A stretch of 64,000 nucleotides of DNA from Fimbriosthenelais zetlandica (Eukaryota). Numbering within the stretch: position 1 is the stretch's first letter; the number at the start of each line of letters is the position of its first letter. Under the pieces are notes generated by a model, which made no database searches, had not been told where the DNA came from, and saw only the letters and a list, made by a program, of their open reading frames with translations. Below, piece after piece: positions 12,761 to 51,600 of the stretch. The stretch is taken from contig OZ365115.1 of assembly GCA_977030845.1 (NCBI GenBank), positions 10,540,001 to 10,604,000 on the forward strand, read 5' to 3'. The position numbers were made by a program, and so were the translations under genes.

Positions 12761-13571
12761 GTCAAGTCTTCTATACAACAAATGTCCTTTCACGTTCAGT
12801 CAGACAACTGAAACTACGCCAGTTATATAGCTCGATGTGTAATCTTGCCATGTATACATATGTCAGCGTTCACAAAATTTTTGTATTCGTTATGCTTAAA
12901 TTCGTGTTCCGATTAGCACTATAGGAGATTGTAGGATAATGTGATTGGAAGGGACTTATTTTTTGTGTGTTCTGTAATCTCAACATCGGAACAGTTTCAC
13001 AAGAGACATAAAGATATAATTGTACTGGAGCACATAGCATGATTATTAGTTATAGAGTTAGTAGGCTATGGGCTAAACCGTTTTCAATGAAACAGACCCC
13101 AGCTATTCATGGGAACTGAACAGCCATTTAAGAGCTGGTCAGCATACAGGGAACGCCTTCATTTCGATAACACTGGCGGATGACAAATTGATATGATATG
13201 GAAGGCTAAAGATTATTATTTTGTGTTAGTAAACATAAACATGTACATTTAGACTACACTTAGAATAATTCACCTGCATTAAACCATGATACTCAGGGGC
13301 GAAGGAAACAGGGGGCACAGGGGCTATGGTCCCCTACCACAGAATTTGGGAGGCACAGTGCCCCCACCCCACCCCATCTCCAACCCCAACACCAATCAGT
13401 ACTATTAACTTGTCATAATTCATCGGAATTGCCCTCCGATTAATATTGAAAAAAATATTTAGGTCCCTCCGCACTCCCCTCAGAAACTCAAATGACAAAA
13501 ACACAACGCCCAACTCAAGACTGCTATAGGCCGAAAAAATATGTCGTGATCCAGGGAAAAGCGACTTACAA

Positions 13572-13636
13572 GACAGGGAATAGAAACCCAGTCTTTAGCG
13601 TCCCGCGCCGCTGTCTTACCTCTAGACTACCTGGCT
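13572..13636 (-). mobile_element. Degenerate tRNA-derived head, mirror copy of 15740-15803
   Basis: Reverse complement reads gccaggtagtctagaggtaagac...ctgggtttctattccctgtc: A-box intact, B-box mutated. Confidence 0.55.
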
Positions 13637-15739
13637 CACAGGTAAGTCTACTACATCCCCACACATTTAGCCTGAACCGACCAGGACAAGTATTTATAAT
13701 TATTTCGCCCCCGGGCCCCCTCCCTGGCCCCAATCTCCACCCCAATCCCCATGTCTATCCCTAGAACTCCCTTCAAAACCACCAGCCCGATTCGAAACGG
13801 CTAACCTGTTAAAATTCCTTGGAATAGCCCACTCTGTAGGTACTGCCCATAGGCTCCAATGTTAAAAAATATTTAGCCCCCCGGACCCCTCCCCGGCCCC
13901 CAACCTCCACCCCAACCCCCATGTCCAACCCCATCACCCATCCCAACACCCTCCTAAAAATTCAGCCCGATCCTATGCTTTTAACCCATCTAAATCCCTT
14001 GAATTCATCAAAAGTGTCCCGCCCATAGGCTCAATGTTAAAAGTCACTCACGATTACAGGAATGTGTTCCACAGAGCCGGTTTGCTAGCCCACACCAATC
14101 GGCTCTTTCTCTACTTGATATGTATTATTTTCACTCGAAACGACGGTTCTGTATGACTTATGATCTCTACTGATAAATATCAAAAGAGCAGAGACGTAAA
14201 ACGAGGATAACACCGATTTCTGCGATATTGCAAATCGGCCTTACGTATACCGGCCTATAATTTGGCCTTTTAAAAACCTTAACAGCGCCCTCTCAGTAAA
14301 AGTCTAAAAAGTTGAATAACTCTGTAAATAATGGGTCTAAAATTACAATTCAAACGGATTATTCTTAGTTGGGAGATCCTTCAGATGTCTATGTGGTTTT
14401 TGTTCCAATAAAATTTGTTTAAAATTTCTGATTTTCAAAATGGCCTGAATTTCTTCATTTAGCATTGGAGTCAATGGAAGGAGGCGGCCGAGCGCATGTG
14501 GCGACCCGAGATGCCGTTGCGGCGAAAACGTGAACTACTATAGCCTACGGCAGCCAGCATAGTAGAATCTTAGAGCATGGCCTGTGTGACAAGCCTCGCC
14601 TTCCAGCCGGGATAGAGACTTGGGGCTCAGGGCCTAGGTGGATGTCGGGCGTTGGATCGGGTGGTGGTTGGGGGGGGGGGGGGGGGTGGGGGGGGGGGGG
14701 GGCAGGACAAAATAAAAGAACAAAGTCTAAAACCCGTAGGCCTATAAGCCTAAATGTTAATTTTGCCCTCAATCCCACCACCAATCTTACTCACTCCTCA
14801 TACCCCGAATCCCAAGTATTATCCCACTCCACTCCTATAAGGCCTATAGCCAGGGCAGGAATAGGTATCATTCGCTTGATCATAGTAATGTAGTTCATCT
14901 TTTTGCCGCTGCTAATCTCGAGCCCCAAGTTGTTCCCGGCTGGAAAGCGAGTTTTTTTTATTCAGGCTATATGCTGGCTTGTACATGGTAGTTCACGTTT
15001 TCGCCGCTAGGGCATCTCGGGTCGCCACATGCGCTCGGCCGCCTGCTTCCATTGACTCCAATGCTAAATGAAGAAATTCAGTCCATTTTGAAAATCAGAA
15101 ATTTTAAACGAATTTTATTGGAACAAAAATCACATAGACATATGACACGTCTCCCAACTAAGAATAATCCATTTGAATTGTAATTTTAGACCCATTATTT
15201 ACAAAGTTATTCAACTTTTTCGACATTTAGTGAGAGGGCGCTGTTAAGGTTTTTAAAAGGCCAAATTATAGGCCGGTATACGCAAGGCCGATTGGTCAAC
15301 TTCTTAGAAATCGGTGTTATCCTCGTTTTGCGTCTCTGCTCTTTTGATATTTATCAGTAGAGGTCATAAGTCATGGATAACCGTGGTTTCGAGTGAAAAT
15401 AACAGATATTAATAGAGAAGGAGCCGATTGGAGTGGACTGGCAAACCGGCTCTGTAGCACACATCCATGTAATCGTGAGTGACTTTTAACATTGAGCCTA
15501 TGGGAGGGACACTTTTGCTGAATTCAAGGGATTTAGACAGGTTAGAAGCAACGAATCGAGCTGACATTTTGGGAGGGAGTTTGGGTGGGTGCTGGGGGTA
15601 GACATGGGGGTTTGGATGGAGGTTGGGGGCCGGGGAGGGGTCCGGGGGCTAATTTTTTTTTAACATTGGAGCCTATGGGCAGTACCTACACAATAGGCGG
15701 TCCAGGCTAAATTTGAAGGGTGTGGTATACGGACCTGTG

Positions 15740-24600: not shown

Positions 24601-27600
24601 ATTTAGAAAAGAATGCAAATGGAATCTAACTTAGCATATTGTGCGATAACTATAAACAAGTTTTAGAGAAGTTCTTGGTGAAAAAGGCAGTGGGGATGAG
24701 ATGTACTTTAAACTAGACAATAGAGGTATGCTTTATACATAGCGCCTTATTTACACAGCCTTTAACAAAGTCATCAATGGAAACTTGGATGAGGACAATA
24801 AAGAAATGAGTAAAGATAATGAAGATAAGATTACAGAGATGGAAACCCCAGAATTTAGAGGAGAAGTAATTTTGTATCATAAGGATACCAGACTATTTTC
24901 ATCAGCTATTTACAAATTAATATGTATCAACTCAATCGGTCATCCATCATCCAGAACTGGAAGCAGGAGTCAAAAGTTCCTATTTTCTGTACAGTAACAT
25001 CCGTGTCAACATGATTAACATATTTTAAGGAGACGGGCAGGGTTAAAAAGTGCAGTGACATTGATATGATTACATTACAATTAACCAATACTAACAATAC
25101 TGGACAGTGTTGGGACATTGTGAGTGTCACATATAGAAGTGAGGCGGTGATCATTAAATGTCTCTCAAGCTGGCCTTCTCTTATTAACATGTTGCTCCAT
25201 CCACTCTTGGACATTATTTTAGGCAGGAGTCCCTAGATGTCATTTGATAAAAACAATTGTCTTTTTTGGCAGTCAAAGGGGTATCTGAGGGCATTATTTA
25301 CATGTTAAGGACATGCTATGCCATGCTTTATGGATGCTTTCTAAGTTAGTCTACTTGAACCAATGCTCCTTATCATGTTATAAGAGCCATTCATATCTAC
25401 AGTTCGAATTTGACTGAAATATCAGATATTTCAGAAAAAGGTAAATTTGGGGATATTAAAAAAAACTGTCAGAGAAAAACTGATAAATAACATAACTGAT
25501 AAATTTAAAACAAACGAAAGAACATTTTTTATATTCTTCTCAAAGGCAACTCTTGAATTTCATTTCAATTTTAAATTATTGAATTTTGGATTTTTTGAGA
25601 ATACGGGCTTTCTCGGGAGTCAATGTCAGGTAGGTGGAGAGGTTACCTGTTGGGGTGGGTAATGGACTGATTGTTACTGGTCAGGCGTGAAAAGACGTTT
25701 CCTTCTCTGGCTTTCCGCGCGGTGGACGGGGAGGCGGGCGGGGTGTGGCCCTCACCCAGTTCACTGCAACTGTATGAGAGAGAGCAGGGTGCATGCAGCA
25801 ATAATGATTACACAGCGTGAGACTTGTAAGCTAGAGATAGTGAGAGTAACAGTGAGGAGGTCTCTACAACAGTATCAATTAGACACACCACACCTTGAAA
25901 CATTGGCTGTGACAGAGCTACCAGCTACTACCGGTCTTACCATGCTATCAAATCATGAGGGGGTATTCATTTGGAAAATTTCACAAAAACTGCAGATTGA
26001 TGTCATCTAGAAAATTTCGCAAATTTAGATTTGAAAAAAAAGGAGTAAAATATGAGACTGAGACGGCAGGAGCTGGTATCTCCGAAATCAAAAGCAAAAA
26101 TAGCTGGCTTCTTCATAATAAGTTGTACTCAGTATACGTATAGACATTGCCTATAGTAGAAAACATTAATATGTTACACTAAATGGCCAAAACAAGTTAT
26201 GTTCATATCTGACATTTTCAAGCCAATTAGTTACGAAGATAACAAAGATGAAATTTGCAATGTTCATCAAAAAGAGTACTCATATAATTTTGAGATGAAA
26301 TACTCAGATTATTTTAAAGAAAAGGTAAATATTTTTTCAATTTTACACAAATTTTGGGGCCAGCTGGGACAACAGTAATGATTAGGACAGACAATCAATG
26401 TTAGTTGTTTTTATGAAAATCGTGAAAGATGTGAAACCATGCAGTGAATATTGAATATATATGAACATGTATATATTTAATATAGTCACATAATTATAGT
26501 GATGGATAGATATAGTGATGTAAAATAATTTTGAACTGGAAGAAATAGACAAAATAGTCACAAAGAGCCATTAAAATGTATCTTGCAAAACAGCAAAATA
26601 TTTTCCCCAATCTACACTAATTAATAGACAGATTTGGAGGAGTTCCAAGGAGGACTAATGTGCTAATTATATTTGGAAGTCTAGAGCTAGTTAATCCAAA
26701 CCAGACTATCTGATCACCCATATATCCAGCACTACCTACTTCTAATCCTACATGGCCAACACTGATGGGCAGGGAGCAGAGCCTCAATGGTAGTAATTAC
26801 CAAGTACATTCGCACGCCCCTTATTAGTGATTTTCTTTTAACAATAGAATTGATAAAGCCTTTAGACTTTCCTCCCCAAATTGTTGTTCCATGAATGGCC
26901 CAGTCCCCCGAACTAGTATAATAGAGAGCATGGAGGTATTAAGAGTGATTAAGGCTTGCTATGGGCTTTCCCTCTCGTTTGCTCTTGTCCCTCAGACTAA
27001 GCCAAGTTCTGGGCTAAGTAGAAGGTTTCCAGCAGTCACACCTCCCCCACACCCACAACAAGCAAGTTTTTTCTCGTCCAATAACACCAGATACAATGTA
27101 ACACAAGGTACTCCAGCGTGTAATATGCCACAACTAATGTTAAACCACCATCCCGCTACAGTCACGATGATGTGCAACGGTTTCACTGGGTTAATTCATC
27201 GTACATATGTGAATGTACTTTGAAATGATTCCAGGTATTTTGACAAAAAAGCAGCTCGGACGTCATAAAAAGTGGATAATTGTTTCATACATGGAAAAAG
27301 CTTCTTTAACGCAAGGATTTATTATAGATTTGGAAATATTAATGTTTCCAAGTTTGGTCAATATTTAAAGGATTGGATACTGGCATGAGGAAACGTATTT
27401 TGGCTGCGCCATTGAGTAGGTATGCCAATACAAATAGCAATCTCACGGAAAACAAAATCACATTTTTCAATCTAGGGTAGTCATTTATTATCCCATTGGC
27501 TACAAAAAGTCTCCTCCTTAGCTGCAAGACTAATGCTAGGAAACAGAGGAGACCCTTCTACTTGAAGACTAATCATTCAGTTTGAAGATATTGAGTGGGT

Positions 27601-30600
27601 TAGATAGGGTCGCCGGTAGGCAGGGCTGGGTGGTGTTTTTTTCCAGATAAGAAACATATTACAGATGTTTAGTGGACTAGTTATTAAAATATGCTGGTTG
27701 TGGTGCTACTTTATTAATGCTAGAGGTGCGGTGCCTATTGTCATTTGATAGCCTGGTCTTTGTCTGGAGGGTGTGGGAATAGGAATGACTGGTGGTGTTT
27801 AATGTGGACGTTACAGGGTCATGCCCACAATGAATACATCCAGGTAGGTCTGATTTATAATACATGTGTAACATATATTTGTAACATGTGTTTACTGAAT
27901 GATATTTATCAGAGGTTTATTATCTGAGTGGCATGAGTCAGGATTTTATTAGATATTTGGAAATACAATGCAGAACAACAATTAGGTCGAATAGTAACGG
28001 CCCCAAAAGTGCAACAGCATTGGTCTAAGATACAATTTAAATGATTAATTTATTCGTAGGTCAAACTATACTTCAAATTTTAAGCGATTCCTACTAGCAC
28101 GAGATTATACGCAGTTCTATCATACACTACATTTTTAATGGAAAAACCCAAGACAATTGGCATTCTCTGCTCAAGATTAAGAAGATTAAGGTAGATTATG
28201 TAGATTAAGGCTGAATTATCAAACCACCATATTATATGAAACACATTGCCACCATTGGCTTTAGCCAGATAACCTTTTCACCCATGTAATATGAATACAT
28301 GTATCATGAAAAGAAATCCGAACCTTCCCGTGGGCAGTTTATACGAAATCACAGTAGTAGCTTGGTTTAATGAAACCAAACTTTTCATCTCGAGCATTTC
28401 AATATCCAAGGATTAACGCAAAGTGGAACAAAGTTTACTCCTTAACCATAGACCTGTAGAGAAAGAGATATCGTAATTTTGAGATTTAGGAACCAATAAG
28501 CCTTAAAGGCATTCTAAGAACAGAATAAAAAACCTGTCCTAATTGATCTCCAATAATTATCACTTTCTATTTTTGTGATTGAATGGCTCATTGTGTTTTG
28601 ATGGGTTGTGCTATCCCCTCACATAAAGATGACCTTTAGCCAGGTGTGGATTTACTGGTTGATGTGTCTGACACCACGTCACATTAGTCATGCAACCCTT
28701 GATTAATAGCCGTTTAATAAATGGGTTCTATTTTTATACATCCTCAAGGTGGAACTGTCAGGGACTCGTTTTCCAGTGAATATTATCAATGGAAATCTTT
28801 TACCTTTCAAAGATTCAAGGACAAGTCGCAAGTAATAGTCAAAACAACTCATATACTTTGCAGTAAAAAATCATCCATTACATGGATTAAATGAAAATTT
28901 AATCAGGCGAATAGCTGATAAAATACAAGACCAATTTATCAGTCTCTGGCCTGCATGGCAGGCCTCTTCACAAAGTCAATGAGCTTTGATAAGCCTGACA
29001 GAAGTATGAATAAGGATATTTAAAATGAGTTCTCATTCTCTAACCAATAGTAAAACAAGGTTAGATAGACAAAAGCTGTGCTGGAGGACCTTCTATTATT
29101 GGGTTGTTTGGCAAATGGTCCCTGCTCTCAATCGAGCCATGTGGAATTCCCACTGATATTAAGCCATGCTGAAGCCATGTAGGTTGTCGGCATATATATT
29201 AGAAATACCCAATATATTAGGAACGATGTTGTGTTTACGGGATGCTAATAAAATTATATATGATTTGTTAGCGGGGGTTTTCCAAGACTTTAGAAGGAAA
29301 TTCGATATCATGATGAAGACCAGTACTTTTTTCAGACAGGATTTAACATTTTTATAACACATCGCTTATTAATTGCAATCTTCTACATTTGCAGAGCCAG
29401 CCACCATGAGTGGGAGTCTGTCAGTAAAGTCACCTGAGGCCATCTTTCCTGATGACAGTTTTCAGATTATACCATGCATCAGCATGGCACAGTCACAGAA
29501 TGACGTGGTGGGTAAGGTGACGTCACCAACCGTCATGTGGGCCATGCCGCGCGATATGATGACGTCAGAAGGGGACCCGCCACAAGGACCGAGTTTACCT
29601 GAGCGACTCACAGCAGCTCCTCTACCTGACATCACTGACACTGTCCTACACAATGACACAGACTCACCCAAGCCACTCTCTAATGCTGAAAGGTGAGCCT
29701 CTCAAAGATAGGAATGGTTCCCGCAAGACAGAAAATTAGCCCAAATAACTGGAACTACAGTTTTCCGAAAAGTAACATGTTCAAGATATGCGCTCTTCAG
29801 AAAGGTTATAAATTCTCAGCACAGCTCTCTAGGGCATGTAAAACAATAGTATGTCTATATATTGGGACAGGTAGCATAGTTTGTATTAAACGTATTAGCT
29901 TCTAATCTCTAGGCTTGTGTTTGGCCAATGAACAATAGATATTATAAATCCCACATTGAGGTCAATAGAAATATTGTAAAATGATAACTGGAATACATTT
30001 AGTTCAGTGGGACTAGAACTGGGTCCTGGGGAGTTAATCCACACATGGCATTGAAATCCCAATGTATACAAGTAGTGCAGCAGATCTAAAAAACAAAATA
30101 TTACAGAAGAATATCTAATTGAAATTATTCGTTCAATGGCAGTGGGCCCTGGAGGGGGGGGGGGGGCTTTTTTTTTTTAAAAAAAGATTAAAGGGACGAG
30201 TGAGGTACAGACCTTGCCAAGAGGAGTTGGCAATGAAACTCATCAATATATGATAATATACGTGGTAGTACCATAATACTGAGACCTGCCACTTTACTCA
30301 GTCAGCGATCAAGCGAAGCATGTCTAAACCAAGCAATAGTCTGTTGTCTGATCATTTGCTAAGAGCTTGATAATAATAGAACAGTTGGGGATATGACACA
30401 GGAGAGCGAGGAACTTTTGCACAACTCAATTTCGGAAAAATATGGTAAGATCTTCTTAAAATGAGGTTTTCTTATCATTGGCAGGACCTGGAGAAAGTGA
30501 AGAGACCATGAAGGGTGTTAATTGAGCTGATTGACTTTCAGTGATCAGTGATCAACTCTCAGAAGCGTGGGAGTTTAAAATTTGATCGAGGCGATTACGA

Positions 30601-33600
30601 GTACGCTCTGAATATATCAAACTCTAAAATACATGGTTTTGTTTTTTGCAGAGTGTTGGTGAAGCACAATGTGGTAGCCAGGCATGCACTCAAGACACAG
30701 AATGAAGACCTTAATCGACAATTCACTAGGATAATGGCTGCTCACGCTGCACAAGAGCGCCTCATTCAAGCTGAACTTCGCTCCATCCAACAGCATACGC
30801 TTTCTCCTGCTGTTGGAGCAACAGCAAGTGCTGTGGATTTCTCACAGATCATGAGTAGCCCACGTAATCTGAGTGCCTCCAATGGCAAATATTTCATCTC
30901 TCCTTTCAACCGGCATAAGGTGGCAGTTCCTAAAGGGGACTCACCCTCGTCCGTATCCTTACCATCGAGTCTAGGCCACAGTAGCCTGGGGGATGAAGCA
31001 CAGGGGAAATACAGCTTGTCCTCAAGACCTAAGATTGGGAAGATTGGAGTGAAGTCAGGGAATGTTAATGTCACTATGGCGGTGACTACTGGTTCAGGTA
31101 CAACCACAACAACCATGACATCAACTCAAGGGATGAGAGTCCATACAACACACACAAGTCCTGCCCTCAAACTAAAACAGACGGCCTCTGGGGGCCTCAA
31201 ACTCCAGCCTGTCAACTTACAACAAGTCAACGGAGCCATCAGTGAGATGAAATCCAAAGGTGGCAAGCCTGTCCGGGTCAAAGTTCAACTTAAGGTCAAA
31301 CTTCCACCTTTGAAATCTGGCAAGCAAAGCCCCATGCTGCCTCAACCCAAGTATGACCCGTCCCAGCTACAAATGCAGCAGGCCAGTGGCTCTCCCTACA
31401 GACAGAAGCAATCCATCAGATTTAGTTCCTCCTCACCAAAGGACATTGCTAAAGAGGAAGCCTCAAGTTTCGGTTCCCTCCGCAAGATTGATATAGTGTT
31501 TAGTGGTGAGAGGGCAGAAGCTCGATCAGTAACACCCCCAGAGACGCCTCCCATGGCATCAACAAACGAGTATGAGAACAGGACACTGGTGCTTCGTTGT
31601 GCTGATGGCACACTATGTCGTGTACCAATAGGCGGCACCAACAAACTCCAAAAACTTATAGCAGCCAGAGATACTTCAGTCACACGTAAAAGCAACTCCA
31701 GTAGCAAAGGTCGACAAAATCCAATAGAAGGCCTCACAGGCAAGTCCATGCTCAAGTCTTGTTTGAAGAAACCACGATCTAAAGTATTCCCAGGACTGAA
31801 AAAATCAGTTCACTTTGCTCCTGATGTGATCGAGGTAAACAGGGAGAGTAAAGAAACAGAACTGCAGCCCACTGTGAAAATTGGTTCCAAATTCTATACA
31901 ATCAAACTCCCGAACATCAAGTCTTTACAACATGTGCCTGTAGCCAGTGACAGATACGCTGTCAGGTCTGTGACTCTACTCCCCAAAATCCCCGAATTAA
32001 CGGAGGATTTTAGGGGTGATTTGGATGCCATAGAGGACATTGATGAGGGTGATTCCATCAATGATGATGGGGAGGAAAACGAGAGTGATGTACCTTCTGA
32101 AGATAGACCATATGCTGCTCGCAGGCGGATAAGTATCAACAAAGATTCAGATGAAAAGCTTCCTAAGTACAAGGATGTGGTTTTACAAGTGAGGATGAAA
32201 AAGAAAAAGACACCGAGCCCGTCACCAGACATGGCTCTAACTGCACCTACTCCAAGTCCAGATGAGTTCCAGGAGAGTGAGACTAACCCAGGGAAATATA
32301 TGGTTTCTAAAGTCCATGATAGATGGAAAGTGACAATAAAAAACAGTTCGCTCATATGATGGTCGACCTAAGAGTTTGTGGATAGCTGTGATATAATGCC
32401 TTTCATATAATTATATGAATCCTTGGCCACATAAGAATCTGTGATAAACTTTCATTCATCAAAGATAACCAGGGACACTTAATTAACTACTCTGGATTAG
32501 GAAAGTTCAAGCTGCTGAATTGTTTTTTTAGTAAAGTCAGAAGGAATTCTATGTAATTAATATTCCACTCAGCTTTGGTATTTTAATGATATGGAAAGCT
32601 AGAATTCAGACACTCTGTCAAAGACAAGAATTACTGAACTTTCAATACTTGATGACATATATATTAGCTTCTAACTGACATTACTTTTTGTAGCAAGCAT
32701 TTACCAATGAACTTAAGATGAATGTTCAAGCAGGACACACCTGTAAATTCAATCTTGCAGGGTACAATTGGATATTTCTTAGTCAGGTTATATAACTGAT
32801 ATTCTAAAAAACTGTGATACTGCAAATCTTAGCCTTGTTATCTGTGAGGTGAAGTACGAAAATGTATGCATTTATAACACATATTATTGTGCATGAATAA
32901 GAATAAAGAGTAATGTTGATTATTCCTGTACCTTTTGCATTCAGCTTTTTCAATATGAAGAATGCAAAACATACACGGAACAACAGCAGGTATGGGGAGC
33001 TAAAATGGAGCTTAAAATGGTCTTAGCAGGGAATGTGAAACTGGGTAGACAGAAGCAAGACAGAGGAATGAAAGCCTGAAGGTTGTTGTACTCACATAGA
33101 ACTTTGCCTGGAGAGAGAGCTGGAGGAAGAGTTGGCTTTCCTCCTCATGGTTGGGGAAGGTTCAGGCATGGAGACCTTGGACGGGGCAGGGTAAGACTTC
33201 CTCATCAGGCTGGGACTGGGTCCTGAGTCGGGCAGTGCTCCTGTCAAACTCCTGGCAAAGGAACAGTCATTTTACAATAACTAAAATGTCCATACAGTCA
33301 ATCCCACAGTAAATGACATGCTACATATGCGCCATCTTGCGCCTAGCTTTAGGCGAAATCTGTCGAACAGTGAAATTTCCAATAGCATTTAAATAGAATA
33401 CAGTGAAATGATCCATTGAACGTTGGCAGATAAATGGGAGAACGTACCTTGACATGGCACCATTTTGCCTGACTGTGGCAGTACCAGAAGTAGAGGCGGG
33501 CCTGATGGGGTTTACGGCTGCGGTAGCGCCTTTAGCAGCAGTAGGGGCTAGCGGTGCGGGCCCCTTGGCTGCAGAGGACGGTAGGACTACTGGTTTAGGA

Positions 33601-48600: not shown

Positions 48601-51600
48601 ACAACCCCAAAAAATCCATACAAACTCCTGTAGACCGAACTATAACAGCTCTACCCATCAGGTCTCCTATACTCCATGACAGCAAAGATACAATGCTTAA
48701 CATCAATACAGACCCATGTAATGCTCACAGAGTATACCCCACACAGGTTGACGACTAAACCTATTAGACTTAATTCTCTATCCTCAGTTGTCCATCAGTT
48801 AATATATAAGAAATAATATATATTTGAAACTAAGTTGATTTTGCATGGATTCTATTACTTCGCATGTATTTCCTGGTTATTATCATAGGCTTATAAGTAG
48901 TTCTAAAATATATTATCAGAAAAAAATCAATTGGCCACATGAGGTATTGTAATTATTATAGGCTGGAGCAGGGAGAGCCGGGTGAGAGATAAGGGTAATG
49001 TATGTATTCACCCCTGTCCTGGTGGGCCAGCTGGATGTCATACATAAAGTAGTACATCAATACATACACAGGTGGCGGTATGCTGCGGGAGACTTAGAGA
49101 GGGGCCAATGAGATCAGAACCCCCTCTAAATATGTGCTAAGGGATATCATCAACAACAAGTGGACCTTTTATAGCTCAATGGATTAATGACGAAAGTTCA
49201 CAAAAGTGTAGTTGGTAGAGACACCGGGGTAGATATTACCCAGACTGTGCCTCGAACCCGCCACCAGCTACCCTCACTACCACACCCCTCAGGCAGTGCT
49301 GTCAGTGTGTGTCTGTAGTAGGGGAGGGGGGAAGGTTGGTGGTGGGGGGGTGGGGGTTGATGGCTATACACAGAAGTGTAATAGGGTGAAAGCCTACTCC
49401 CAGAAACCAATGAAGCATGAAGCAACCACCTCCAGGTAAAAGCTAAGAGTAGGGGTAGAGTGGGGGGGGGGGGGGGGGGGGGGGCTGTGAGGTGGGAGAA
49501 GCTGGTGGTTGGTTCGAGGCACAGTACAGGCTTTAGCTTTCACACCTGCAGCACACGCTCTGTCGTGCGCCTATTGTATAGGGATTTGGGGCTGGGTGGG
49601 GGAGGGGAGGGTTTAGTATGAAGAGGCACTTGGCTAGGGGTACTAGTAGGTTGGGGGGGGGGGGTTGTTACTGATCTTAGCTGGTGGGAGGTTCGAGGGA
49701 CAGGCCTTAGCTTTCACACTTGCAGCAGACGCTCTGCAGGGGAAGTTGGGGAGGGGGGTGGTGGTTGTTTAGTTGGAAGCTACAAGTAACCCATTCAGGT
49801 GAACATGTGTAAGCACACCAGCAGGTAGAAAGCTTCAGGGGGGGGGGGCAAAAGATATATGCATTTCCAAACACCCCCTCCTCACCACTGCCCACTGGTC
49901 AGTCACAAGCTGTGGTGCCTCAGCAATTATATATTCAGGGTGAAATCTTCACTCAGTTCAAACCTCGGTGACCAATAATCCACCGGCAATAGCCGAAGAG
50001 TCAACGGAAACCACCAAAGCAGTGTATTCAACTATCTTCGAGTAAAGTCATGATTATTATTACAAAATTACCCCATCCCGGCTTCTTTCTCTTCCATTTG
50101 ATTTAATATAATAGGGAGCCCCAATTGGCGACAGAAATGGCTCCTGTCCTTTGAGGTGTGGAGGCCTGTATCAAGTGTATTTGGACGTCCATCATCGGCC
50201 TTGTTTTTGATGAGTTACATGTACAGGCTGACTGAGGGCTGGCGGAGCAAATCACTTGCTCAACCCTGTACAACAGGTGTCACTAGTTCATACTCCCTCT
50301 ACACTTGGCGCCATCCCGTGGACAACCCTAGAACTAACCTTTCAATGACTTGGCGCCATCTTCTGGGATTAATCGGAACTTTCAAGGCAGATGCCGGCGC
50401 GATACGGATAGGATCCGATTATTTAAGACCAAAGTTATTGAAAGGCATGAACTGTAAATTTGATTATATATAGGGGTCAGTATGAGTATGGGAAGTAGCG
50501 ATGGGAAGTCACTCACCAAACCACAGTTGATAGAGATGCCCTCCTTGGCGCGGTCACCTGTCGCCCCTGTCCGCTTGAGGCGCTCTGAGCCGGCCAGATC
50601 CACAAAGTGAAACTTAGCCGTCAACGTCTCAAACTCACTGGTTACCGACTTCTCCATGTCTTCCTCCCCTTCACCATTCTGACAAATAAATATAAGGGGG
50701 GTTAGTCGAACCAAACATGAAATAATTATCATAAATCATTTAAGCTAAAGTTAAAATAACTTTCATAATAGTAAGTCTCCAGATATGTTTGCATCCCTTT
50801 TCTATTATATTTACAGGGTTCCCACTGACTAATTTAGAATGTCCTGACCAATTCTAATAATAGAGATAATAAGATAAGTTTTTCCTCTTTCAGGTGGGAC
50901 TTACCTGTTCTATGGGGGCGACCCGCTGTTGTTTTATGAGGAGAGTGAAGATGGCGTGAGAACGTGAAGACTGGGCGTTCATGTTGGTACTCCCGGTGGT
51001 TCGTGACAAGGCGCCAATCTTCAAACATTGCATCGTCTGATGACACAGAGAAAAACATAAAGATATAGCAAAGATATGGTTTCACATGGGGTGATGCATA
51101 AATCATGTATAAACATACGATATATTTATTAGCATATTAATTATTTAGAACAACAAAGCCCTTATAAATGTGTGAAGCTATTGTATATGGAGCACTGGTT
51201 CTGAATTGACTTTTATGGATTTCCAAGTGTAATATTTAGAAATGTCTATAACTGAAATTCAATTCGAGTAAAGTTCACGAGAACTTACATCCTGCAGAGA
51301 GGAAACACTTTTTGTTGTGATTCCAACTGTGTATATTTCACCATAACTGTCTTCATGGATTTTGATATGCGATTTTTTGCCCTAGAAAGAAAAGTTTTAC
51401 TTTCATTAACAAGCTTGAAATTGATGTAAAGTAGCCACAATATGATAAATTGAATCATTTTTACATTTCAGAAAATAAGAGTAATATTACCTTTTCTGAA
51501 GGATCCCTTGTGGTGTCTAGCAAATCATTAATTTCTTCATTATACAACTGCAAGTAAAAGAAAAGAAAATTATATTATTTATGGTATTTAAGTAAAACAA

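What the first reader, a model, noticed from the sequence alone, without database searches (positions are those of the whole stretch)
29395..32907. Unrecognised ~664-aa gene nested antisense inside a KIF21 intron
A perfect Kozak ATG, canonical phase-matched splice sites, a 1.7-kb stop-free exon in AT-rich DNA, and AATAAA about 190 nt before the next KIF21 exon all support a real gene. The protein is S/T/K/P-rich and probably disordered, with a short coiled coil ([12 protein letters not shown]...[11 protein letters not shown]), an acidic patch and basic clusters; I recognise no family. Convergent overlap with a kinesin host implies transcriptional interference or mutually exclusive expression (nested genes are often germline-specific; inference).
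Basis: partly seen in the sequence, partly recalled or inferred. Interest (0 to 1): 0.75.

Follow-up and report, generated by a model that had tools for sequence, protein, structure and literature searches.

The report
Conserved disordered-protein gene nested in KIF21
This is a real, single-copy gene sitting backwards inside an intron of a KIF21-type kinesin gene; it has stayed there in at least three animal species and makes a mostly unstructured protein whose best-kept segment looks like a docking site for protein phosphatase 1. This is an ordinary kind of gene, but a family with no name yet.

Summary
The start ATG is at 29406. Coding exon 1 is 29406-29692, the GT-AG intron is 29693-30651, and exon 2 is 30652-32359. 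The junction is phase-matched and the product is 664 aa. The only AATAAA lies at 32902-32907.

The exon-2 open frame (604 codons) is by far the longest in the 64-kb window. The gene lies antisense in a 7.3-kb intron of a kinesin-motor plus WD40 (KIF21-type) gene.

A related species has an ortholog (49% identity) with the same start codon, splice sites and phase, in the same host intron. A third, far more divergent contig keeps the same acceptor and has KIF21 exons downstream on the opposite strand.

Two haplotypes of the relative give dN/dS of 0.15-0.28. The gene is single-copy in its 447-Mb genome. It has no Pfam, PDB or Atlas match.

AlphaFold finds only one confident N-terminal helix. The rest is basic, S/T/P/K-rich and probably disordered.

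The most conserved block carries a canonical PP1 docking module ([11 protein letters not shown]), the only such motif in each ortholog. A complex prediction with a stand-in PP1 gave weak support (0.58, best control 0.01).

Expression could not be tested because no sequencing run was listed. The scan had noted only this same stretch, not other DNA.

Verdict: a real gene and a new, unnamed family of a familiar kind.

The parts
29395..29405 (+). 5' untranslated part of the first coding exon. It follows an acceptor-like polypyrimidine tract plus AG (29380-29394), which implies an upstream non-coding exon that I did not locate.
   Evidence: The relative has the same arrangement (tctcttctcttttcag, then 10 nt, then ATG) with an in-frame TGA between acceptor and ATG. 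That fixes the ATG as the start.
29406..29692 (+). Coding exon 1 (95 codons plus 2 nt). Weakly conserved: 30% identity to the relative, with a shared SF.Q..P....AQS..DVV motif and a PLS.A.R end.
29693..30651 (+). GT-AG intron of 959 nt, about 2.8 kb in the relative. It contains a G12/T10/A7 homopolymer run.
30652..32359 (+). Coding exon 2 (568 codons plus the TGA stop). 49% identical to the relative over 99% of its length.
30656..30796 (+). N-terminal amphipathic helix, protein residues about 98-144. It is the only confidently folded element (pLDDT about 90). A moderate heptad pattern suggests a possible dimerising coiled coil.
30869..30922 (+). Conserved short motif SNGKYF(I/V)SPFNRH. The third species has QYFTSPY at the corresponding place.
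31256..31330 (+). Conserved basic block [24 protein letters not shown] is invariant in all three species.
31574..31663 (+). Conserved block [23 protein letters not shown]. It is modelled as a beta-hairpin plus helix, at low confidence.
31745..31756 (+). SILK-like tetrapeptide SMLK, 15 residues before the docking motif (KKSVHF). The relative has HVLK and the third species PILK. Each copy departs from the [GS][IV]L[KR] consensus at one position.
   Evidence: Consensus as given in PMC9813921.
31799..31837 (+). Candidate PP1 docking module [13 protein letters not shown] (RVxF followed by a hydrophobic pair). It lies inside the longest conserved block (31793-31897) and is the only region alignable by BLASTP to the third species.
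   Evidence: Consensus from PMC4794898. Complex prediction.
32285..32353 (+). Conserved C-terminal block [16 protein letters not shown], shared with the close relative only.
32360..32907 (+). 3' UTR ending at the only AATAAA (32902-32907) between the stop codon and the host exon.
33096..33251 (-). Host KIF21-type exon on the 5' side of the host intron, in host orientation. Acceptor AG is at 33253-52 and donor GT at 33095-94. It is conserved in the relative (68%) and recognisable in the third species (34%).
25647..25769 (-). Host KIF21-type exon on the 3' side of the host intron. Acceptor AG is at 25771-70, with a second AG 6 nt further on; donor GT is at 25646-45. It is conserved in the relative (61%).

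Best explanation
This is a genuine, single-copy, protein-coding gene with at least two coding exons and a 664-aa product. It lies on the plus strand, wholly inside a 7.3-kb intron of a minus-strand KIF21-type kinesin gene.

The nesting is old. A moderately diverged relative keeps the gene in the same host intron and orientation. A third, much more diverged species keeps the same acceptor, with the host exons next to it on the opposite strand.

The protein is basic (pI about 9.6), rich in Ser, Thr, Pro and Lys, and mostly disordered. It has one N-terminal amphipathic helix that may dimerise. After that comes a collinear series of short conserved motifs.

The best-conserved motif is a canonical protein phosphatase 1 docking module: a basic pair, then [ST]VHF, three residues, and a hydrophobic pair, preceded by a SILK-like xxLK. 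My proposed mechanism is that the protein is a PP1-interacting scaffold or targeting subunit. It would hold the PP1 catalytic subunit through this module, while the other conserved motifs and the helix bind substrates or set location.

Shown here: gene structure, conservation, purifying selection, nesting, and the motif's presence and conservation.
Inferred: PP1 binding (my odds about 0.45-0.5), dimerisation, and any cellular role.
Odds that it is a real protein-coding gene: about 0.95.
For: Gene reality
- The 604-codon open frame has a chance expectation of about 1e-13.
- Splice sites are canonical and phase-matched.
- The ortholog P0001 is 49% identical over 99% of exon 2.
- The relative has the same acceptor position and phase.
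- It also has a matching exon 1: same start, in-frame upstream stop, same donor phase.
- Codon-position identity is 0.59/0.72/0.38 with dS saturated and dN 0.43.
- The relative's two haplotypes differ at 20 synonymous and 12 non-synonymous codons, giving dN/dS 0.15-0.28 and binomial p = 1.5e-5. The two haplotypes are 2% divergent in the CDS and 5% in the flanking DNA.
- The gene is single-copy and has no paralog.

Nesting
- Host exons flank the gene in the window.
- They flank it in the relative on both sides.
- They lie downstream, on the opposite strand, in the third species.

Disorder
- AlphaFold2 mean pLDDT is 37, and only residues 2-48 of exon 2 are confident.
- Composition and hydropathy agree.

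PP1 docking
- Each ortholog has exactly one match to the strict RVxF consensus, at the same aligned site.
- KKSVHF and KKTVHF also fit the extended six-residue consensus used in PMC4794898.
- That consensus appears in only 0.5-0.7% of shuffles of these proteins; the five-residue form appears in 3-6%.
- The motif lies in the only block that still aligns to the third species.
- The spacing to the following hydrophobic pair resembles the RVxF-PhiPhi arrangement described for most PP1 regulators in PMC9813921.
- Complex prediction, using residues 355-450 of exon 2 against a giant-virus PP1-type phosphatase, scored 0.58 in the median of 3 runs, with best control 0.01. By my reading, the phosphatase's RVxF pocket residues are conserved. 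The tool's verdict was 'weak support': the runs agree in at least 38% of contacts and partner pLDDT is at least 39. The mark was reached by 51 of 78 solved complexes and 2 of 108 mismatches, but scores of 0.60 or less are weak.
Against: - There is no expression evidence of any kind; no run was listed.
- No promoter or 5'UTR exon was found, and no conserved non-coding block lies upstream.
- RVxF-type motifs are short, and the loose form occurs by chance in about a quarter of proteins (PMC4794898). Conservation of the motif is also not independent of conservation of the block around it.
- The SILK-like element misses the consensus in every species.
- The complex score is in the range the tool calls weak. 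It may reflect the model's memory of solved PP1-peptide complexes. It used a heterologous viral phosphatase, and no interface was reported.
- The AlphaFold alignment was only 4 sequences deep, so low confidence does not prove disorder.
- Only three species carry a detectable homolog in about 1.8 billion cluster representatives, so the breadth of the family is unknown.
Confidence: 0.55

Rival explanations
1. It is a real, conserved nested gene, but the KK[ST]VHF block is not a PP1 docking site. The block would instead be a binding motif or beta-strand for another partner. The protein would act as some other kind of disordered basic scaffold, for example a nuclear, chromatin or microtubule-associated factor.
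For: - All the evidence for gene reality applies here too.
- The protein is basic, with KKKK and KKPR clusters.
- Several other equally well conserved blocks have no PP1 connection.
- Short-motif matches are error-prone (PMC4794898).
- The complex prediction is only weak support.
Against: - The extended RVxF consensus is rare by chance (0.5-0.7% of shuffles).
- The motif is unique in each ortholog, at the same aligned site, and has the usual basic N-flank and downstream hydrophobic pair.
- The stand-in PP1 scored 0.58 against 0.01 or less for the controls.
- Pfam found no tau/MAP repeat or any other domain.
Confidence: 0.4
2. It is not a functional protein-coding gene. It would instead be a chance ORF, a decaying pseudogene, a transposon or virus-derived ORF, or a non-coding antisense transcript of the host.
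For: There is no expression data. There is no known domain. Very few homologs were found in very large databases.
Against: - An open frame of this length is not expected by chance.
- The frame is intact in three species, with conserved splice sites and phase.
- The coding-type substitution pattern and dN/dS of 0.15-0.28 indicate selection on the protein.
- It is single-copy with no repeat or transposon signature.
- Conservation is far stronger in the plus-strand frame (467 bits) than in any antisense frame (about 50 bits or less).
Confidence: 0.03
3. The ORF is an unrecognised alternative exon or alternative product of the host kinesin gene rather than a separate gene.
For: It lies inside the host transcription unit.
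Against: It is on the opposite strand to every kinesin and WD40 exon. The minus-strand frames across it are closed: the longest is 157 codons and poorly conserved. It has its own ATG, splice sites and poly(A) signal on the plus strand.
Confidence: 0.01

Closest known systems
Disordered PP1-interacting proteins that dock through RVxF plus a PhiPhi pair (examples named in PMC9813921: spinophilin/neurabin, GADD34/R15B, RRP1B, KNL1, NIPP1)
   Same: A single RVxF-type motif fits the strict and extended consensus. It sits in a region with no confident fold, has a basic N-flank and a hydrophobic pair three residues downstream, and has a SILK-like element upstream. It is the best-conserved part of an otherwise fast-evolving protein.
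   Different: There is no sequence homology to any of these (no Pfam or PDB hit). The SILK-like element is off-consensus in every species. Binding is only predicted, and weakly. No substrate-binding or localisation domain is recognisable.
Nested (intronic, opposite-strand) protein-coding genes of animals
   Same: The gene lies wholly inside one host intron, on the opposite strand, with its own start codon, splice sites and poly(A) signal. The host-guest pair is kept together across species.
   Different: The arrangement itself is not unusual. Here it is kept even in a species where the guest protein retains only about 36% identity over about 87 residues. Neither partner's expression has been examined.
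Host: KIF21-type kinesin-4 (motor, coiled coil, C-terminal WD40 propeller)
   Same: The window carries kinesin motor exons, whose best PDB matches include KIF4 and KIF7, and WD40 exons in one minus-strand series.
   Different: The nested gene shares nothing with the host in sequence. No functional link between them is shown.

Membership tests
RVxF-type PP1-interacting proteins | Sequence matching the RVxF docking consensus (strict [HKR][ACHKMNQRSTV]V[CHKNQRST][FW]; extended form with two leading K/R) | tested here: met
   KSVHF, KTVHF and KTVHF: one per ortholog at the same aligned site. The window and the relative also fit the extended form; the third species does not (VKTVHF). Chance rates are 3-6% for the strict form and 0.5-0.7% for the extended form. 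Consensus from PMC4794898.
RVxF-type PP1-interacting proteins | Motif lies in an accessible, disordered stretch | tested here: inconclusive
   AlphaFold2 pLDDT is about 30-40 around the motif. The alignment had only 4 sequences, so low confidence is not proof of disorder.
RVxF-type PP1-interacting proteins | Accessory motifs: a PhiPhi pair downstream and a SILK motif ([GS][IV]L[KR]) upstream | tested here: inconclusive
   VI (window, relative) or VK (third species) lies three residues after the F. Upstream are SMLK, HVLK and PILK, each one residue off consensus. Definitions from PMC9813921.
RVxF-type PP1-interacting proteins | Physical binding to the PP1 catalytic subunit that depends on the motif | tested here: inconclusive
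   Prediction only: score 0.58 (three runs 0.58-0.61), best control 0.01, verdict 'weak support'. It used a viral PP1-type stand-in and gave no interface. Real binding cannot be tested with these tools.
Nested intronic gene | Whole transcription unit inside one intron of a host gene | tested here: met
   The CDS and poly(A) signal (29406-32907) lie between host exons 25769-25647 and 33251-33096. The 5' end of the transcript was not located.
Nested intronic gene | Independent transcription from its own promoter | not testable with these tools
   No sequencing run was listed. No conserved upstream block or CpG-rich region was found.
KIF21-type kinesin (host) | Kinesin motor and C-terminal WD40 repeats in one gene | tested here: met
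   Pfam PF00225 hits in four minus-strand exons and PF00400 in two. The exons are collinear on the minus strand. I did not build a full spliced model.
Any Pfam family, including tau/MAP tubulin-binding repeats | Profile match at or near the gathering score | tested here: not met
   There were no meaningful hits for the window protein, P0001 or P0003. PDB sequence and profile searches were empty. The Atlas gave no usable hit.

The most novel reading that the evidence does not exclude
The guest protein is a lineage-restricted PP1-targeting subunit whose long co-residence with KIF21 is functional. On this reading, antisense nesting would couple or oppose the expression of the two genes. The guest would bring PP1 to the kinesin or its cargo and so control the motor's phosphorylation state. 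That would make this a host-guest gene pair with linked regulation and linked biochemistry.
Probability: 0.07. Interest if true: 0.6.

Novelty: new member of a known kind. Interest (0 to 1): 0.3.

Why it matters
The result turns an unverified ORF into a well-supported gene model, with its exact exon structure and two further species that carry it. It also shows that a fast-evolving, domain-less protein can be traced across deep divergence by its fixed position inside a conserved host intron.

It gives a concrete, cheap hypothesis to test: motif-dependent PP1 binding. If that holds, it adds a new family to the PP1 regulator repertoire of a poorly studied animal lineage.

It does not bear on any long-standing open question. 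Nested genes and RVxF-bearing disordered proteins are both common.

Tried and rejected
Expression
- Two searches for sequencing runs (whole gene, then exon 2; a first attempt at the second failed) listed none. Read laying was therefore not used, and expression, strand and junction usage are untested.

Homology searches
- Pfam, PDB sequence and profile searches and the ESM Atlas gave nothing.
- The word-based protein search found only the close relative. Run with P0003, it found only P0003 itself.
- The exhaustive HMMER search also returned P0002, a 1286-aa protein made of repeats. It matches only the VKLPPLK region nine times over, and I reject it as spurious.
- Cluster look-up gave no names.

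Literature
- Searches for the two sample accessions, and for KIF21 with 'nested gene' and 'intron', found nothing.

Organism
- I could not identify the organism of the window or of either relative. Earlier notes of the scan did not name it.

Promoter
- A search for a conserved promoter or 5'UTR exon, by blastn against the relative and by CpG profile, found nothing.

PP1 partner for the complex test
- The genome's own PP1 catalytic genes are split into short exons, so they could not be given unaltered to complex prediction.
- I used an intronless PP1-type ORF from a giant-virus metagenome bin instead.
- I judged its RVxF pocket residues conserved against human PP1 numbering recalled from memory, not from a tool.

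Other
- A tau-like KIGS...HVP resemblance was considered and dropped: the spacing differs and Pfam does not support it.
- Rfam and a tandem-repeat scan of the intron found nothing relevant.
Full report
**1. What is in the sequence**

- An acceptor-like tract ends at 29394.
- The ATG is at 29406, in a gccaccATGa context.
- The donor GT is at 29693-94 and the acceptor AG at 30650-51.
- The junction is in phase 2 (AG+A = Arg).
- The TGA stop is at 32357-59.
- A single AATAAA lies at 32902-07.

The spliced CDS is 1995 nt and encodes 664 aa with no internal stop. The stop-free stretch that holds exon 2 is 604 codons. The next longest in any frame of the 64-kb window is 164. At the window's base composition, the expected number of such stretches is about 1e-13.

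**2. The host gene**

Minus-strand open segments form a collinear series.
- P-loop, switch II and neck exons lie at about 61.8, 50.7, 46.1 and 45.7 kb.
- Coiled-coil exons lie at about 41.8-39.9 kb.
- WD40 exons lie at about 24.4-20.9 kb.

Pfam confirms the kinesin motor in four exons and WD40 in two. The best PDB matches of the neck exon include the kinesin-4 members KIF4 and KIF7. A motor followed by a WD40 propeller is the KIF21 architecture.

The two host exons nearest the finding are 33251-33096 and 25769-25647. Both have canonical splice sites. The gene therefore lies antisense within a 7.3-kb host intron.

**3. Conservation**

*The relative.* A search of 5.8 billion proteins returned one hit, P0001. 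It is 49% identical over 99% of exon 2. It comes from a 3.6-Mb contig of an ENA assembly (L001).
- That contig has the acceptor at the same codon and in the same phase.
- About 2.8 kb upstream it has a matching exon 1. The ATG-Ser start is the same, the donor phase is the same, and an in-frame TGA lies between the acceptor-like site and the ATG. This fixes the start codon.
- Exon 1 is only 30% identical. Exon 2 shows eight blocks of at least 80% identity, separated by divergent, indel-rich linkers.

*Host exons in the relative.* Downstream of the ortholog, the host's exons follow in the same order on the opposite strand. Walking 9.5 kb upstream on the second haplotype found the host exon equivalent to 25769-25647 and the WD40 exons. 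The relative therefore keeps the gene in the same host intron, which is about 19 kb there.

*The third species.* The exhaustive HMMER search of 1.84 billion cluster representatives added only P0003 (E = 9.8e-4). BLASTP aligns 87 residues of it at 36% identity. Its 5-kb genomic contig (L003) shows three things:
- the same acceptor position and phase;
- the collinear motifs: N-terminal helix, YF.SP[FY], VKLPPL, the K[ST]VHF block, and [DE][RK]Y...LPKI;
- two host linker exons downstream on the opposite strand, recognisable by ARRKTAT and PSPS..RKS.

The nesting therefore predates a deep split.

**4. Selection and copy number**

Between the window and the relative:
- identity by codon position is 0.59, 0.72 and 0.38;
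- dN is 0.43;
- dS is saturated.

Between the relative's two haplotypes:
- 20 codons differ synonymously and 12 non-synonymously;
- dN/dS is 0.15-0.28 depending on method;
- the binomial p is 1.5e-5 against the neutral expectation;
- divergence is 2% in the CDS and 5% in the flanking DNA.

The plus-strand frame is conserved far better than any antisense frame: 467 bits against about 50 or less. The gene is single-copy in its 447-Mb, 79-contig genome. A profile search found no distant paralog. No repeat, transposon or RNA-family signal lies in the intron. Together these rule out a chance ORF, a pseudogene and a mobile-element ORF.

**5. The protein**

No Pfam, PDB or Atlas match exists for any of the three proteins.

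AlphaFold2 on the four-sequence alignment gives a mean pLDDT of 37. One confident helix covers residues 2-48 of exon 2. A few low-confidence hairpins fall in the conserved blocks.

The protein is basic (pI 9.6). It is 12% Ser, 8% Pro and 9% Lys. It has no hydrophobic segment that could be a signal peptide or membrane span. The helix has a moderate heptad pattern, with 7 of 14 core positions hydrophobic. Dimerisation is therefore possible but untested.

**6. Proposed mechanism**

The longest conserved block (31793-31897) begins with KKSVHF. The relative has KKTVHF and the third species KTVHF.
- This is the only match in each protein to the strict RVxF consensus.
- In the window and the relative it also fits the extended consensus [KR][KR][ACHKMNQRSTV]V[CHKNQRST][FW] that PMC4794898 used as a high-specificity screen.
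- Shuffled versions of these proteins contain the extended form in 0.5-0.7% of trials and the strict form in 3-6%.
- A hydrophobic pair follows three residues later. PMC9813921 describes this RVxF-PhiPhi arrangement for most PP1 regulators of known structure.
- Upstream, all three proteins have an xxLK element (SMLK, HVLK, PILK). It resembles the SILK motif but does not meet it.

The genome's own PP1 genes are split into short exons. I therefore tested docking against an intronless PP1-type phosphatase from a giant-virus bin (L009).
- By my reading, its pocket residues correspond to those of human PP1. That numbering is from memory, not from a tool.
- The prediction scored 0.58 as the median of three runs, and the best control scored 0.01.
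- The tool calls this weak support. The runs agree in at least 38% of contacts, and the partner's pLDDT is at least 39.
- The mark was reached by 51 of 78 solved complexes and 2 of 108 mismatches. Passes at 0.60 or less were more often wrong than right unless the guess was already likely. A pass may also reflect memory of solved PP1-peptide complexes.

I put PP1 docking at a little under even odds. The main rival is that the block binds something else.

**7. What remains open**

- No sequencing run was listed for this sequence. Transcription, the 5' exon, tissue pattern and any interplay with the host are all untested.
- I could not name the organism.
- Only three species are known to carry the family. 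Whether that reflects restricted distribution or sparse sampling is unknown.

**8. Verdict**

The observation and the core interpretation are correct. The thing itself is a familiar kind: an intronic nested gene encoding a fast-evolving disordered protein. It belongs to an unnamed family, and motif-dependent PP1 binding is a testable hypothesis for what it does.

Noticed in passing
window 25763-25771 (minus strand): The host exon's acceptor has two AG dinucleotides 6 nt apart (acAGttgcAG). This could be a tandem acceptor that adds or removes two codons of the kinesin linker.
   Followed up: no
L009 1830-2786 and 3300-4184: A giant-virus metagenome bin encodes a 318-aa PP1-type phosphatase, 78% identical to the animal PP1 core exon. 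The residues I take to be the RVxF pocket are kept. A collagen-like GPPGP-repeat protein is encoded next to it. Seventeen other viral contigs carry similar phosphatases.
   Followed up: partly
L001 versus L004 (two contigs of ERZ25767047): The relative's assembly holds both haplotypes of this locus. They are about 5% divergent in non-coding DNA, with a roughly 2-kb length difference downstream of the nested gene (L001 14900 aligns to L004 16911).
   Followed up: partly
window 30150-30186: A homopolymer run of about 12 G, then about 10 T, then about 7 A lies inside the nested gene's intron.
   Followed up: no
window 13300-15700 and 49200-49900 (minus-strand frames): GC-richer stretches have open frames full of proline runs (PPPPPP) in several frames. 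They look like low-complexity or repeat-derived DNA rather than exons.
   Followed up: no
window 31894-32355 (minus strand): A 153-aa ATG ORF runs antisense to exon 2. Its conservation is far weaker than that of the plus frame, so it is a by-product of the plus-strand gene.
   Followed up: yes
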